From Ostrea edulis (Eukaryota): DNA of 64,000 nucleotides. Where the stretch lies: NCBI RefSeq assembly GCF_947568905.1, contig NC_079168.1, positions 31,248,001-31,312,000 on the forward strand, written 5' to 3'. Position numbers and translations under genes: made by a program. The notes beneath the pieces are model-generated. The model worked only from the letters and a program-made list of their open reading frames with translations, did not search any database and had not been told where the DNA came from. Below are positions 46,653 through 63,770 of the stretch, piece by piece. Each line of letters starts with the position of its first letter. The stretch's first letter is position 1.

Positions 46653-49631
46653 ACTGCTATTTAGTATTTGAAAATAGTACAGTCTATATCTGTTTCAATA
46701 TTTTGATTTACCAAACAATGTGGACTGTCTATCCAAATTAATTAGATATCAAATTGATTTAAAAACTATTCGTTGGTACTGTGCCACAATTCTTTCACAT
46801 GTCAGTTTTCTACAAATCGGTGATCAATTGTTCGTATTTCCTTTCTGCAGAAAACACAGGACAGTGGATTAATTACTTTTGATTTTATATATTAAAAAAA
46901 GTAATTTGTTTGTATGAATCTATGCAGTAATTAGAATTTTATCCATTGAAGTTTGGTTTCTTGTGGAGTTTTAAAAGATAGTTTATATAATATACACCAA
47001 TTCATATACGGAAAAGAGCCCCCCCCCCCCCTTTTCATTCCATTTTAATAATTTAAAAAAAAAAAAACGGTCTTTTTTCGACACATGACGGGGGATTGAT
47101 TGCTGTTGATTTGAAAAAAGTAATTTTGTTGGTATAATTTGTTCACAAAGAATTCATCTATTAGAAGAGTTGTTAATTTTGGCAATTCTGGTCCAATTAA
47201 GGAAACCTTTTCCCAAAAATCATTGCGTAAAGTTTTACACAAACCCAGACTGATAGCCAAACCCTTCTTCACAGAGCAGTAATATCTGTATCACATGATT
47301 TGACCCGCTTTGATTCATCATTTTAATTCTCCATATTCATGCTTGTGAATTATGCTGGGGTTCAATAACACTGTGGACCTTACTTCCTCATCAGAGAAAT
47401 ATACTTCCTTTTTCCAATAACTTCATAAAGTGTGCTTATTTCTGGATTTGGTAAGACAAGTATGAGGTGAATAATGTTAAGCATTATCAGGGTTTACTAT
47501 ACACTTTAATCTACCTATTGGGGTTAATTTACGTAGTCTTCAGTAGCTAAACAATCTTTGAAATGTAAAGTTGAAGTGAATCATTTTGTGAAGATTCAAT
47601 GAGAATTTATTTCATTAATTCAAAATTTTGTGAGGTAACTACCATGGGAAGAAATTAGTCAAACGGTTTCCGGTTGTTTTAGGTATGTGGTAACAGTGGT
47701 ATGGGTATTAACATAATTATGTACATGTAATACTGGTTATCTCTATGACATGTCAAGCGTTGCAATATTTGTTTTTATAATTTTTGTTATATATTTACAA
47801 TTTGTATTACATATAATTTTCCATTTGTATTCTATTTTTTCTATTTATATTGTATAATTTTTCACTTGTATTGTATATCTCCATTTTCATTATAACGGTT
47901 TTAATTTGTATTTTGTAATCTTTCATTTGTATTGTATTCAAAGGATACTTTATTTTGAATTTGTTATTAAGGATTTCATTGGTCAAGTTTCAACCCGCAT
48001 CGTGTCTTCGTTACTGTTTGTGTTGGACTAACACATTTTCCAATTTGTTCTCAAACACTTTCACTCTAATTTGTTTATCAATTTCCGTGTCCTTTGTTCA
48101 CCCTCTGTTTTCAGTCAGATCATATAGCGCTTCAGTTGACGCACTGCAGAATTTCTAGATTCAGTACAGTTCATTGCAATGTTTGACCAACATATTTTCC
48201 AAGATTTTTCTCTAAGACTTTCATTGAAATTTTCCATCAATTTCATCGTTAGTCCTCAATGTTTTTGATCAGATTGTATGATATTGTAAAAATAATCCAA
48301 GCCTTTGTTTCGGTTGACACATTGCTAAATTTCCCGATTCCTTTGCGGGTTGATCCAATGATCAATGCATCCGGATGCAGCATTCTTCTAAGATATTAGA
48401 AATGTTGAACTTTTAGATCTTGTCCAGCTACCTGGTCTTCTCATCTCATGTCATCTCGCCCTCTATTTTCTTAATCTTATCTCTTTTTTTTTTTTTCAAG
48501 GATGCTGCTATCTCTTGTACACGTGATAGCAGGAACATAAATAACTGTTCTTTATGCCTCGATGATGTTAGATTTATGACATCAGTTTGATATCATCAAC
48601 AAAATTCAAATCATCCAGATGTTTCAATATATCACACTGCGATCCGCTGTTTCCATGGTTAGTACCGGTAATCTACATAATGTAGTTCACGAAACAGTCA
48701 ATCAAAATGTGAAGAAGGGATAGGTGATCCTGTGCGTTTGTTTTACTCCAGATGTAATTTTTAGTTTTTAGTTTTAACCCCTCTGATTTCTTTCCAACAA
48801 GTTGTATATATGTCTCTCAGAATGTTGAAGGTCTTACCAAATCTTTGAATGATATTCAAGAAAGAGTGTTTACATAAGTGTCAATTTTAAATGTTTTTTC
48901 AACAAAGTTAAAATAGTAGCATAAGATAGAATCCCATTCCCGAATCTGTTCAATTTCGTAAGTTTGCGAACTAAAAAATTATTGAATCTTGTACAATGCT
49001 ATATTCAGCCACTCTGATATTACTACGCAGAGGAACTTCCCCAGAACTGATACCCTGTCAAGTGTTGCAGTCGGTATGATTTTCTTTTGGAAAACTTTAT
49101 ATGTGATGCTTTTGTTTCCTTCATTATAGCTAGTGTGTAGCTACTGTACTTAATGTGTTGATAAGTGTACGGGGTATTGATCTTTTCCCTTCGTCATCTA
49201 ACCAAGGAGACTTAAAATTATTGAATAATACACTGTAAGTGTAAACTAAAAATCCCAAGGTTGTCCACCAGAAAGCTATACTACATTACAATTTAAATTG
49301 TATTAGATAACAATGCAAAATATTTTTACTTTACCGTGTAACGTAAATCATAGAAAATATATGATGTCACAATCAAATGACGTCGCAACAGTGTGAAACA
49401 GAAAAATCTCACATGGCTGTCTCACATGGATAAAGTCGATCTCACACTGGTGATGATGTGAGAAAGAAAAATCTCACATGGCTGTCTCACATGGGTAAAG
49501 TCGATCTCACACTGGTGATAATGTAAAACAGAAAAATCTTACAATTTGACTCCACTTTTTTGGCACGCTGTTTTCCCCTATAATAGCTCTAAAACTTCAT
49601 TGTTATTTCGGATTACAAACATTTCGGTTGA

Positions 49632-49675
49632 GCATCACTGAAGAGACATTATTTGTCGAAATGCGCATCTGGTGC
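49632..49675 (+). ncRNA. Minimal type I hammerhead ribozyme (copy 1, intact core)
   Basis: Helix I GCATCA/TGGTGC; core CTGAAGA; helix II GACA-ttatt-TGTC; GAAA; 2-bp helix III closing GCGC inside palindrome ATGCGCAT; AUC triplet, predicted cleavage after 49669. Confidence 0.85.
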
Positions 49676-49981
49676 ATCAAAATTGGTACCGTATAAGTTT
49701 TACATTATGACCCCTGGGTCGAGGCCTCTGCTGGTGGACTGTTAGTCCCCGAGGGTCTCTACAGCCCAGTAGCTAAGTACTTCGTTACTAGCTTGAAAAT
49801 ACGGAGGTATATTTAATTGCTGTTATACAATTTAGAAATTCATTTCAAAATTAAGGATTATCTCCCTCACGCATAGCTCTTATCCTTAGACGAATTTGAC
49901 TCCACTTTTTTGGCACACTGTTTTCCCTTATAATAGTTCTAAAACTTCATTGTTATTTTGGATTTCAAACATTTCGGTTGG

Positions 49982-50025
49982 GCATCACTGAAGATACATT
50001 ATTTGTCGAAATGCGCATCTGGTGC
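49982..50025 (+). ncRNA. Minimal type I hammerhead ribozyme (copy 2, G10.1->T at 49995)
   Basis: Same motif as copy 1 except CTGAAGA-T-ACA, which breaks the conserved G10.1-C11.1 pair. Predicted cleavage after 50019. Confidence 0.75.
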
Positions 50026-50779
50026 ATCAAAATTGGTACCGTATAAATTTTACATGGGTAAAGTCAATCTCACACTGGTGATAATGTGAGAGAAGACGTT
50101 TATTTGGCAGTGTCTTCTTATCTCATACGGTGATCCCTTTGCTATTAAAAAATCTTACTGAAAAGTTCTTTCCGTCTTAACACAAGTGTTTCCCGCTTTC
50201 TTCCCCCTTAATGATAAAACTAGATTCTTTTGTGATGTTTTAAAACATCTTCATGAAAAGGTGATCAAACTCATAACTCCCACAAGTAATATACACTGAT
50301 TTTGACTACGGAATACTCCGATTACCTGGTCAAGAAATAGAACTCATGGCGAGTGTGACCAGTGGACATGGGATGCTTACTCCTCCTAGGCACCTGATCC
50401 CACCTCTGGTGTGTCCAGGGATCCGTGTTTGCCCTGTTCTTAAGTATTCCTTATAGGAGTTATGGGATGAGCCACATCCAATTATCACATAATTCAGTCT
50501 GTTCTGGTGTAGAAAAATCCAAAGTATGGATTAGCTTTGGCTTCTTAAAAAAAAGTACTCAAAACTCTCAATGGAGGAGAGTAAAGTTTTATGCGAATAT
50601 GATGTGGACCTGATTGTCTTTTGAGGTAAGGTTAAAGGGAATCATGTGAGACATCGTGTATGTTTGGTATTTTATATGAACGATGTCCATGACTATATTT
50701 ACGTCGTTTGAGAAAATTCAGCCTCGTGAGGATATACAAGGTCAGCTAGTAAAGGAAAATATTTCTTACCCATGGAAAT

Positions 50780-61747: not shown

Positions 61748-63770
61748 AATGAAAGATGAAGTTAACGAATAGTGATCAATTTCATAACTCCTATAAGCAA
61801 TACAAAATAAAGAGTTGGGCAAACACGGACCCCTGGACACACCAGAGATGGTATCAGGTGCCTAGGAGGAGTAATCATCCCCTGTTGACCGGTCATACCC
61901 GCCGTGAGCCCTATATCCTGATCAGGTAAACGGAGTTATCCGCAGTCAAAATCAATGTGCCAAGAACGGCTTAACAATTGGTATGAAACACATCAGACAG
62001 CATTTGACCCAATGATATGTTGTATTAACAAACTAGATCGTTATAACGACCATAGAATTTGCGAAATGCTGACTTCAATCGAGACTGTTGAAACCCCTGT
62101 ACCATCAACTTGTTTGTCAGTAGCTTACCTTGATTTAAAAACTGACTATACGCAGAACAAGCTCTTGCATATCGAATCAGTTGAGATATTATATAAACAC
62201 CATATGCAGGTCATAATGGAATATTGCTACATAAATATGGGAAGTTGACGATGGAGAAGTTGAAATAATCCCGTTTGTCATACAGTTGAGTTGTCAGCTT
62301 GCCGTTAATGTCTACTTTCAATAAAATATCTACGTATGAAGCAGAAGTGGACGACTCTGTGGTGTCCTTTATTTCGAGCTCACAGGGATATATCAAATCG
62401 ACATATGAATGAAAGCTATTATTGTTAATAGACAAAACGTCATCGATCTATCTAAATGTCGAATTGAAGGCCGCAGCGAGAGATTTTTTCTTGCCACGTA
62501 GAAGTTTTTGAATAAATTTCGCTTCATACGAATATAGAAACATGTCAGCTAACAAAGGAGCACAATTCGTGCCCATGGGAATTCCAACAGACTGTTAAAA
62601 GACCTGATCACCAAACACCACGAAGATATTATCAATGAGGAACTCTAACATATTTTTTATTTCAACTTCAGAGTACTTGTGCGTGGAATCAGAGTGGTGT
62701 TTAACAAAGTAAGCTTTTGAATGACTGATCACTAGATATGAATATTTCCGTTTTCCGTTTTTGTTCAAGAAGCAACTGTCTATGATATCAAAAAATCTAG
62801 TCTTTAATTCATCGTGAGGAATGGTCGTGTATAGTGTTGAAAAGTCATAGGTTTTAATGTTATTGATTTGGGAAAAATTCTGCAATTTCAAGTTTACTAA
62901 AAGTTCTTTAGAATTTTGTAGAATCCACAATTGATTAATACCACTTCTGGCATATGTAGTCGCACAGTAAGTTTGAAGTTTCTCCTTCACAGCTGTTAAT
63001 AATTTCGTCAGGAGGAAAGATAGGGGCTTCGTAGAGCACTTACTGGATCCAGCAATGTATCTTTGTAAGAGTTGTTATGTAGTTTAAGAATCCAGTATAG
63101 GTACGGTAACTCATATTCATTCGCCCCATTGACTGAGATTTTAAATGTGTCTAAAACTGAAGCATGGTTTTGAAGAATTTCATCTTTTGAAAGGGCAGTT
63201 GGAGTATAAGTATGATTACCAAAAGTGGAATTAATACCAAGTTCGTTTAAAATACAGTTGTAATAATGAGCCTTACAAACAAAGACAATGTTGTTACTAG
63301 CTTTGTCAGCTGGAACCAAAACATATTCCTCATGTAACCTATCTAATTCTTTTATCACTTCTGGTTTACTAAATACAGAAGGATAGATGGTACGTAATTT
63401 TGTTTTCTTATGTCTAATGCGGGATTTTAATATCCCTCTTATACTTTTAACCCATTCTGACAATGTATCAAGTTCTTCTTTTTCATATTTAGCCCATCGT
63501 CTGGCATAATCTTCGACAAAATTCACAATAGAGATGAAGTTCTGTCGCCAATTAAAAGACCGAGGTTCTCTGTATTTAGGACCTTTTAGAATAAGTGATT
63601 TGAGGTCCTCATTTTCAACTATATCAACATCACCAGTAATGACATGTCCAGCTGGACTATAGTTGAAAGAAGATGAAGAACAAGAACATGTTGGTTGATT
63701 ACGTATAAGATGGTCTATATCTATGCACTGCAAAGTTTGTTTATAATTAAAAAGTTTGGATGCAATATCA
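61748..63770 (-). mobile_element. Penelope-like retroelement (Naiad/Chlamys-type), 5'-truncated and inactivated RT plus 3' terminus
   Basis: Linker KGPKYREP and VPADKASNN; RT motifs YDFSTLYTTIPH, GIPMGTNCAPLLAD and (Y>stop)IDD. Frameshift near 63075 and stops at ~62595, ~62450, ~62211. ORF ends DVFHTNC* at 61971 with no C-terminal GIY-YIG, then a ~220-bp terminus ending ...atctttcat. Confidence 0.85.

What the first reader, a model, noticed from the sequence alone, without database searches (positions are those of the whole stretch)
49542..50052. Retrozyme-like unit: two dimer-type hammerhead ribozymes exactly 350 nt apart
Seen: two minimal type I hammerheads (49632-49675, 49982-50025) with predicted cleavage after 49669 and 50019, so a read-through transcript would release a 350-nt monomer with no ORF. 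Helix III is only 2 bp and sits in the palindrome ATGCGCAT. Established: such minimal hammerheads fold as dimers in Penelope-like LTRs and non-LTR retrozymes, and mussel retrozymes yield circRNAs of roughly this size. Inference: this is an oyster-type retrozyme family mobilised in trans by the Penelope-like elements that crowd this locus. Copy 2 has a G10.1->T change, so this locus may make only one efficient cut, while the family could still make circles.
Basis: partly seen in the sequence, partly recalled or inferred. Interest (0 to 1): 0.8.

Follow-up and report, generated by a model that had tools for sequence, protein, structure and literature searches.

The report
Oyster hammerhead retrozyme copy
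This is one ordinary, partly decayed copy of a very abundant 350-base non-coding mobile repeat of a bivalve genome that carries a self-cutting hammerhead RNA motif, a kind of element already described in mussels, corals and amphibians.

Summary
Two type I hammerhead motifs sit at 49632-49675 and 49982-50025, with predicted cuts after 49669 and 50019, exactly 350 nt apart. Copy 2 has lost G10.1 (T at 49995).

They are not independent. The locus is a single 513-nt insertion (49543-50055): a 5'-truncated partial unit followed by one full 350-nt unit, set inside a 65-nt tandem repeat.

The family is very large. The genome holds 15,666 matches to its 3' end, 4,771 unit-to-unit junctions and 6,372 exact intact hammerheads. 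The 3' end is fixed 36 nt past the cut site, 5' ends vary, and roughly 40% of insertions exceed one unit. It has no ORF, no poly-A and no clear target duplication. That is the Penelope-like insertion pattern.

Two hammerhead segments are predicted to pair through the palindrome AUGCGCAU, giving an 8-bp helix III. An RNA-Seq run holds a 380-nt contig (350 + 30) of an intact-hammerhead variant. This fits circular or multimeric RNA but does not prove it.

Not supported:
- Penelope-like elements crowding this locus.
- A partner element sharing the 3' end.
- An unusually self-paired circle.

The scan has already reported this family on other DNA of the same genome. Verdict: a new member of a known kind, of low interest.

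The parts
49543..49705 (+). 5'-truncated partial unit (unit positions 188-350), which acts as a pseudo-LTR
   Evidence: BLAST of the unit against the locus gives 95.1% over 163 nt. The direct repeat D1 was found.
49706..50055 (+). Full 350-nt unit, ending in the family's fixed 3' end (...GTATAARTTTTACAT)
   Evidence: The same 3' end occurs in nearly all of 30 sampled copies. Contigs diverge from the reference right after the repeat's end (loose ends at 49705/49706 and 50052). The 3' 23-mer has 15,666 genome matches and the reversed control has 0.
49632..49675 (+). Hammerhead copy 1, type I, all core positions intact. Predicted cut after C 49669.
   Evidence: Descriptor scan. RF00163 scores 31.2 bits, E 1.7e-6, full-length model.
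49982..50025 (+). Hammerhead copy 2, with G10.1 changed to T at 49995, so the G10.1-C11.1 pair is lost. Predicted cut after C 50019.
   Evidence: Sequence. RF00163 drops to 22.0 bits and the helix II pairs are no longer aligned. G is the family majority at this position, 88% of 57 units.
49661..49668 (+). Palindrome ATGCGCAT (helix III plus loop). It recurs at 50011-50018 and is the predicted intermolecular 8-bp helix III of a dimeric hammerhead.
   Evidence: Cofolding two 59-nt hammerhead segments gives -35.3 kcal/mol, against 2 x -11.8 for the single segments, with the palindromes paired between the strands.
49670..50019 (+). Predicted 350-nt cut-to-cut monomer. It is non-coding, 38.6% G+C, and no more structured than shuffles.
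   Evidence: No ORF over 50 codons. Fold z = +0.57 linear and +0.63 circular.
50020..50055 (+). 36-nt tail between the cut site and the fixed 3' end of the insertion
   Evidence: Downstream matches in the genome search stop at query position 36-40 in almost every copy. 3' ends were listed.
49392..49542 (.). Host sequence: a 65-nt tandem repeat (2.3 units) interrupted by the insertion. It resumes at about 50056-50084.
   Evidence: Tandem Repeats Finder gives period 65, 90% matches. Repeat family D2 includes 50020-50084.

Best explanation
The stretch 49543-50055 is one insertion of a very abundant, non-coding, non-autonomous retroelement of the metazoan retrozyme kind, in a bivalve (oyster-like) genome.

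Each 350-nt unit carries a classical type I hammerhead near its 3' end. Helix III is only 2 bp inside a palindrome, so the motif is expected to cut efficiently only when two copies pair, as in newt and axolotl repeats.

Shown here:
- the motif;
- the copy number;
- the fixed 3' end 36 nt past the cut site;
- variable 5' ends;
- frequent head-to-tail partial tandems;
- the absence of ORF, poly-A or a tRNA-like head;
- the presence of family RNA-library contigs that cover a full unit.

Inferred:
- Longer-than-unit transcripts are cut by paired hammerheads into 350-nt monomers, which a host RNA ligase may circularise.
- A Penelope-like reverse transcriptase/GIY-YIG endonuclease, encoded elsewhere in the genome, copies uncut multimeric or circular RNA from a fixed internal start, with frequent 5' truncation.

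This particular locus is a dead-end copy. Only its upstream hammerhead is intact, and 8 of the 350 positions of its full unit differ from the family majority.
For: Motif.

Family size: 2,365 first-look candidates, with the 40 scored being 93-100% identical (the full-length matches 95-97%), on contigs C1-C10. There are 15,666 matches to the 3' 23-mer, 4,771 to the junction 23-mer and 6,372 exact 39-nt hammerheads, all with 0 matches for the reversed controls.

Architecture: all 30 sampled copies are a partial unit plus 1-3 full units, nearly all with the same 3' end and with 5' starts from unit position 78 to 310. Junction and 3'-end counts give about 10.9 thousand insertions, of which about 40% exceed one unit.

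Non-coding, no tRNA-like head and no other Rfam family in the unit.

Dimer pairing.

RNA libraries: RNA-Seq run X2 has a 380-nt contig laid whole on 49647-50026, with G at 49995 and family-majority letters at several sites where this copy differs.

[quoted passage not shown] One such family has a minimal hammerhead about 45 nt before its own 3' end.

Literature: PMC7229834, PMC4209133, PMC8557442, and bioRxiv 10.64898/2026.07.22.740005.
Against: - Self-cleavage and circularity are untested. Only contigs were available, and a 350+30 contig can also arise from linear transcripts or DNA of copies longer than one unit.
- The predicted circle is no more self-paired than shuffles (z = +0.6), unlike published retrozyme circles.
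- No target-site duplication and no microhomology above control in 24 copies.
- No Penelope-like element sharing the hammerhead or tail was found, so the partner is unknown.
- The Rfam score is 2.8 bits below the gathering threshold.
- The family is too young (about 4% divergence) to show compensatory changes.
Confidence: 0.82

Rival explanations
1. It is a fragment (solo pseudo-LTR pair) of an autonomous Penelope-like element rather than a separate non-autonomous family.
For: Penelope-like elements carry hammerheads in their pseudo-LTRs and form partial tandems (PMC4209133, PMC8557442). Such elements are abundant in this genome.
Against: Unit end joins unit start directly at 4,771 places, with no coding body between. 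None of 36 Penelope loci shares the sequence apart from chance insertions. The Penelope hammerhead seen here is of a different type: a bulged A, a 6-bp helix II and no loop 3.
Confidence: 0.05
2. It is a SINE-like element moved by a LINE, with the hammerhead as a passenger, as proposed for Schistosoma Sm-alpha.
For: It is a dispersed, short, non-coding, 5'-truncated repeat with a fixed 3' end.
Against: No poly-A or simple-repeat tail, no tRNA-like head and no target duplications. Head-to-tail partial tandems in about 40% of insertions are a Penelope hallmark, not a LINE one (PMC8557442).
Confidence: 0.07
3. It is a satellite or tandem repeat spread by DNA-level processes, and the hammerhead has no role in its propagation.
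For: Head-to-tail units occur. Newt hammerhead repeats were first called satellite DNA (PMC7229834).
Against: There are more than ten thousand dispersed sites on all large contigs, arrays are mostly 1-3 units, the 3' end is fixed and the 5' end varies.
Confidence: 0.04
4. The hammerhead-like motif is a chance match.
For: Rfam gives no hit at the gathering threshold.
Against: 0 hits in 100 shuffles. The full-length RF00163 alignment has E 1.7e-6. There are 6,372 exact copies, and every core position is the family majority.
Confidence: 0.01

Closest known systems
Metazoan non-LTR retrozymes (Cervera & de la Pena 2020, PMC7229834), especially the Mytilus galloprovincialis family
   Same: Both are found in bivalves. 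Both have a type I hammerhead in every unit, a unit of about 350 nt (mussel 350-390), thousands of copies (mussel about 5,000 hammerheads), low G+C, no ORF, a head-to-tail arrangement, and co-existence with Penelope-like elements.
   Different: Here most insertions are dispersed singletons or 1-2 units, not long arrays. The predicted circle is not unusually self-paired. RNA circles are not demonstrated. Sequence homology to the mussel family was not testable.
Newt satellite 2 / axolotl retrozymes (dimeric type I hammerheads)
   Same: Helix III of 1-2 bp is capped by a palindromic loop, so two motifs are needed for an active fold. The unit is about 330-350 nt.
   Different: The phylum is different and there is no detectable shared sequence beyond the ribozyme core. 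The copy number is lower than in axolotl (about 126,000).
Penelope-like element pseudo-LTRs and their non-autonomous derivatives (PMC4209133, PMC8557442, bioRxiv 10.64898/2026.07.22.740005)
   Same: Shared features are 5' truncation, a partial tandem that forms a pseudo-LTR, occasional inverted pairs, and a hammerhead a few tens of nt before the 3' end. A Penelope family of this genome cuts about 45 nt before its own end.
   Different: This element has no RT/GIY-YIG ORF. Its hammerhead is the classical type I form, not the Penelope minimal form. No sequence similarity to an autonomous element's 3' end was found.
Plant LTR retrozymes (PMC4918200)
   Same: Both are non-autonomous, have hammerheads in direct repeats, and are cut into unit-length RNA proposed to circularise.
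   Different: The plant elements have type III hammerheads, true LTRs with PBS and PPT, about 700 nt, high G+C, and Gypsy mobilisation.

Membership tests
Hammerhead ribozyme type I (Rfam RF00163) | Conserved core CUGANGA ... GAAA ... UH around three helices, with helix I open | tested here: met
   Copy 1 has every core position, helix I of 6 bp (plus 4 more after a bulge), helix II of 4 bp and helix III of 2 bp in a palindrome. Copy 2 lacks G10.1.
Hammerhead ribozyme type I (Rfam RF00163) | Score at or above the curated gathering threshold | tested here: not met
   31.2 bits against 34 for copy 1, and 22.0 bits for copy 2. Both align over the full length of the model. E is 1.7e-6 for copy 1 and 0.0019 for copy 2.
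Hammerhead ribozyme type I (Rfam RF00163) | Self-cleavage at the predicted site | not testable with these tools
   Only assembled contigs of public runs were available, and these cannot show RNA ends.
Metazoan non-LTR retrozyme | Short (150-450 bp) head-to-tail repeats, each with a type I hammerhead | tested here: met
   The unit is 350 nt, with 1.46 units at this locus and up to 3 or more elsewhere. There are 4,771 unit junctions in the genome.
Metazoan non-LTR retrozyme | Non-coding, low G+C (below 45%), no LTR-type features | tested here: met
   No ORF over 50 codons and 38.6% G+C. No tRNA-like sequence or other RNA family in the unit. PBS and PPT were not looked for specifically.
Metazoan non-LTR retrozyme | Expressed as unit-length linear and circular RNA | tested here: inconclusive
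   Family contigs occur in RNA-Seq runs, including a 380-nt contig equal to one unit plus 30 nt. This fits a closed 350-nt cycle at an assumed assembly word size of 31, but also fits tandem DNA or read-through RNA.
Metazoan non-LTR retrozyme | Highly self-paired circular RNA | tested here: not met
   The circular minimum free energy is -65.7 kcal/mol, z = +0.63 against dinucleotide shuffles. The linear fold has z = +0.57.
Penelope-mobilised non-autonomous element | Fixed 3' end, frequent 5' truncation, partial tandems that form pseudo-LTRs | tested here: met
   One tail-to-tail inverted pair was seen in L022.
Penelope-mobilised non-autonomous element | 3'-end sequence shared with an autonomous Penelope-like element of the same genome | tested here: inconclusive
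   None of the 36 GIY-YIG loci (about 149 kb) shares it.
Penelope-mobilised non-autonomous element | Autonomous RT + GIY-YIG elements present in the genome | tested here: met
   There were 1,102 first-look GIY-YIG candidates. [quoted passage not shown]
SINE (tRNA/5S-derived, LINE-mobilised) | Small-RNA-derived head and an A-rich or simple-repeat tail | tested here: not met
   ARAGORN and Rfam find nothing in the unit. Copies end in ...TTTTACAT with no tail.
Plant LTR retrozyme | Type III hammerhead within true LTRs | tested here: not met
   The motif is type I, with helix I open.

The most novel reading that the evidence does not exclude
The insertion scars of this family may be direct genomic evidence that a Penelope-type reverse transcriptase copies uncleaved circular or multimeric hammerhead RNA from a fixed internal start site, going round more than once (rolling-circle reverse transcription). 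Three observations point that way. The 3' end always lies 36 nt past the ribozyme cut, not at it. About 40% of insertions are longer than one unit. The 5' ends in the sample never fall at the cut site but cluster 5-50 nt upstream of it, inside the ribozyme. Together these would give a sequence-level handle on a step of the retrozyme life cycle that is so far only hypothesised.
Probability: 0.25. Interest if true: 0.55.

Novelty: new member of a known kind. Interest (0 to 1): 0.25.

Why it matters
It adds an oyster family, with more than 10,000 insertions and more than 6,000 intact hammerheads, to the known metazoan retrozymes. Its very regular insertion scars could be mined to test how these elements are reverse-transcribed.

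For annotation, it explains a common 350-nt repeat and stops its hammerheads from being reported one by one as new findings. This copy itself has no special role.

Tried and rejected
Rfam: the whole window and a 2.5-kb stretch gave no hammerhead. Only 121-nt stretches, which get laxer filters, did.

Partner element: a 23-mer taken from contig loose ends turned out to belong to sister subfamilies of the same repeat, 74-89% identical, not to a Penelope-like element. In 36 GIY-YIG loci, three retrozyme copies lie nearby, which is about what chance predicts, and there is no shared 3' end. Further genome DNA could not be fetched.

Penelope crowding of the window: tblastn with 15 Penelope ORFs found only a 22%-identical remnant at 62055-62852 (-). 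The window's ORFs of 110 aa or more gave no RT or GIY-YIG Pfam hit.

Target-site duplications and microhomology: none above control.

Sampling bias: my first sample (30 of 30 copies longer than one unit) was biased, because the query spanned the unit junction. The unbiased motif counts give about 40%.

Reads: no raw reads were available, so RNA ends, strand and circles could not be tested. The 'goes back 351' joint in X1 lies at a T-run and is a mapping ambiguity between the two repeat copies, not a circle junction.

Majority profile: a column majority of 62 natural units was computed only to tell private from family letters. It is not reproduced here and no altered sequence is proposed.

Structure: no excess structure on either strand of the monomer or in the G+C-rich first 105 nt of the unit.
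Full report
OBSERVATION

At 49632-49675 there is helix I (GCATCA / TGGTGC), the core CTGAAGA, helix II (GACA / TGTC, loop TTATT), GAAA, the palindrome ATGCGCAT (49661-49668) and the cut-site C at 49669. The same layout recurs at 49982-50025, with the cut after 50019, so the spacing is exactly 350 nt.

- A strict descriptor scan of both strands of the 64-kb window returns only the first site, and nothing in 100 shuffles.
- The second site fails only because G10.1 is T at 49995.
- Rfam gives nothing on the whole window or on 2.5 kb.
- On 121-nt stretches, RF00163 Hammerhead_1 aligns full length at exactly these coordinates: 31.2 bits for copy 1 (gathering 34, E 1.7e-6) and 22.0 bits for copy 2.
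- The Rfam consensus itself has a loopless palindromic helix III. This is therefore the classical metazoan type I hammerhead, not the Penelope 'minimal' variant, which has a bulged base after A9 and a 6-8 bp helix II (PMC4209133).
- The two motifs are copies within a 163-nt direct repeat, 95% identical, so they are one event and not two coincidences.

ANATOMY OF THE LOCUS

The repeated DNA runs 49543-50055 (513 nt). Measured against the family, it is a 5'-truncated partial unit (unit positions 188-350, 49543-49705) followed at once by one full unit (49706-50055).

- The cut site is unit position 314, and the insertion ends 36 nt later.
- The insertion interrupts a 65-nt tandem repeat: 49392-49542 upstream, resuming at about 50056.
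- The 350-nt cut-to-cut monomer has no open stretch over 50 codons on either strand, even read round a circle, and is 38.6% G+C.
- ARAGORN and Rfam find no tRNA-like or other known RNA in the body.

THE FAMILY

A search of the window's own genome (895 Mb, ten large contigs) with the monomer gave 2,365 first-look candidates. The 40 that were scored are 93-100% identical (the full-length matches 95-97%) and lie on contigs C1-C10.

Exact or near-exact pattern counts, each with 0 matches for the reversed control:

| Pattern | Matches |
|---|---|
| 3'-terminal 23-mer, up to 1 mismatch | 15,666 |
| 23-mer spanning unit end to unit start | 4,771 |
| Intact 39-nt hammerhead, exact | 6,372 |
| Same motif (34-nt version) with a base other than G at 10.1 | 333 |

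- The 333 is close to the background decay of about 4% per site. The T at 49995 is therefore a private or minor-lineage mutation, and the family majority at this position is G (88% of 57 units).
- Sister subfamilies 74-89% identical also exist.
- All 30 copies first sampled are a partial unit plus one to three full units. Nearly all share the 3' end (...GTATAAGTTTTACAT), and their 5' starts run from unit position 78 to 310.
- That sample was biased, because the query spanned the junction. The unbiased counts give about 10.9 thousand insertions, of which roughly 40% contain a junction, that is, exceed one unit.
- There is no poly-A, no simple-repeat tail, and no target-site duplication or microhomology above control in 24 copies.

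HOW THE RIBOZYME SHOULD WORK

- A single 59-nt segment folds into helices I and II with no real helix III (-11.8 kcal/mol).
- Two segments cofold at -35.3 kcal/mol, with the two AUGCGCAU palindromes paired into an 8-bp intermolecular helix III.
- This is the arrangement known for newt and axolotl repeats, which cut well only as dimers (PMC4209133, PMC7229834).
- The pair formed by this locus's two copies is weaker (-31.2 kcal/mol), and copy 2 lacks the conserved G10.1-C11.1 pair. A read-through transcript of this locus would at best be cut well at 49669 only.
- This step is predicted, not shown.

RNA EVIDENCE

Only assembled contigs of public runs were available.

- Family contigs occur in two RNA-Seq runs of a 'mollusc metagenome' study (X2, X4) and in two runs whose RNA label is a guess (X1, X3).
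- Run X2 holds a 380-nt contig laid whole on 49647-50026. It has G at 49995 and the family-majority letter at several sites where this copy differs from the family, so it comes from another copy with an intact hammerhead.
- A length of 350 + 30 is what a closed 350-nt cycle gives at word size 31. That word size is my assumption; no tool output states it. The contig therefore fits circular or multimeric RNA, but equally tandem DNA or read-through transcripts.
- Many contigs of X1 and X3 leave the reference exactly at 49705/49706. This independently marks the family's 3' end.
- No statement on RNA ends, strand or circles is possible from these data.

LINK TO PENELOPE-LIKE ELEMENTS

[quoted passage not shown] A 2026 preprint argues that animal retrozymes derive from Penelope pseudo-LTRs (10.64898/2026.07.22.740005).
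- The genome holds many GIY-YIG copies (1,102 first-look candidates).
- One such family carries a minimal hammerhead whose cut site lies about 45 nt before its own 3' end, and it inserts at (TA)n. The hammerhead-then-short-tail layout is therefore shared.
- Its sequence is unrelated to the retrozyme, and none of the 36 loci shares the retrozyme's 3' module. The partner is unknown.
Fifteen Penelope ORFs of this genome hit the window only at 62055-62852 (-), at 22% identity, and the window has no other hammerhead.

MECHANISM, WITH ITS STATUS

Shown: a non-coding 350-nt unit with a dimer-type hammerhead, a fixed 3' end 36 nt past the cut, variable 5' ends and frequent tandems longer than one unit.

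Inferred:
- Transcripts longer than a unit are cut into monomers, which a host ligase may circularise (as in mussel, PMC7229834).
- Reverse transcription does not prime at the ribozyme-made 3' end. It primes at a fixed site on uncut multimeric or circular RNA, and often stops early.

In the biased sample, 11 of 26 independent 5' starts fall at unit 266-310, against an expectation of 14-20%, and none falls at the cut site. This is suggestive only.

COMPARISON AND NOVELTY

The closest known system is the mussel retrozyme: a bivalve family with about 5,000 hammerheads and 350-390 bp repeats (PMC7229834).

Differences:
- The copies here are mostly dispersed 1-2-unit insertions rather than long arrays.
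- The predicted circle is no more structured than shuffles (z = +0.6).
- RNA circles are unproven.

No paper in the library describes an oyster hammerhead retrozyme.

Earlier notes of this scan (s1-287401, s1-292085, s1-311841, s1-279176) had already reported the same 349/350-nt family on other DNA of this genome and judged it ordinary. My independent tests agree. It is a new member of a known kind, and this copy is a decayed one.

LIMITS

- The species name was not verified. The earlier notes say flat oyster.
- The census rests on short-pattern counts, which sister subfamilies may skew.
- The search for the autonomous partner is incomplete.
- No altered or consensus sequence is proposed. The tests suggested use natural copies.

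Noticed in passing
window 49392-49542 and 50056-50084: The host of the insertion is a 65-nt tandem repeat with an internal TCTCACATGG duplication. It is itself a repeated family, with high contig depth and several loose ends in the runs laid. About 13-14 nt of the expected 65-mer are missing at the insertion point.
   Followed up: partly
L045, L048-L052, L054, L056, L062-L066, L068, L070, L071, L077 (hammerhead at about locus position 2040-2720; L077 at about 5438): A Penelope-like family (RT plus C-terminal GIY-YIG; a 973-aa ORF in L077) has a textbook minimal hammerhead: a bulged A after A9, a 6-bp helix II and no loop 3. Its cut site lies about 45 nt before a 3' end that abuts (TA)n microsatellites. 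A longer form repeats the last ~12 nt.
   Followed up: partly
L073 (G000:C1:110499000-110508999), also L074-L076: A second Penelope-like family has intact 787-aa (RT + GIY-YIG) and about 406-aa ORFs. It occurs in head-to-tail copies 3,717 nt apart and in inverted pairs elsewhere, and many copies give identical scores, so it looks recently active. No hammerhead was found by my descriptors.
   Followed up: partly
window 62055-62852 (-), ORFs 62595-62990 and 63008-63733 (-): A weak reverse-transcriptase-like remnant (22% identity to a Penelope ORF of this genome, E 1e-6), with no Pfam hit for the ORFs. It is the only Penelope-like trace found in the window.
   Followed up: partly
L001-L030 (5' ends of the upstream partial units): 5' starts cluster at unit positions 266-310, inside or just before the hammerhead: 11 of 26 independent copies against an expectation of 14-20%. 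None starts at the cut site (315).
   Followed up: partly
L022:1005-1961: Two retrozyme copies lie tail to tail in opposite orientation and overlap by about 27 nt around the GGTACC palindrome of the tail. This is a Penelope-style inverted arrangement.
   Followed up: no
L033-L035 (hammerhead just after locus position 1523, minus strand): A sister subfamily (82% identical) has A9 changed to C and a G-U wobble in helix II. Its shorter tail runs into (TA)n.
   Followed up: no
window 49631/49674 (run X3): One contig (depth 11) skips 49632-49673, that is, almost exactly the hammerhead. It appears to be a deletion variant of the family.
   Followed up: no
window 7759-8829 (-): A 356-aa ORF with a Pfam DUF6860 match (E 1.3e-8). 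It is unrelated to the finding.
   Followed up: no
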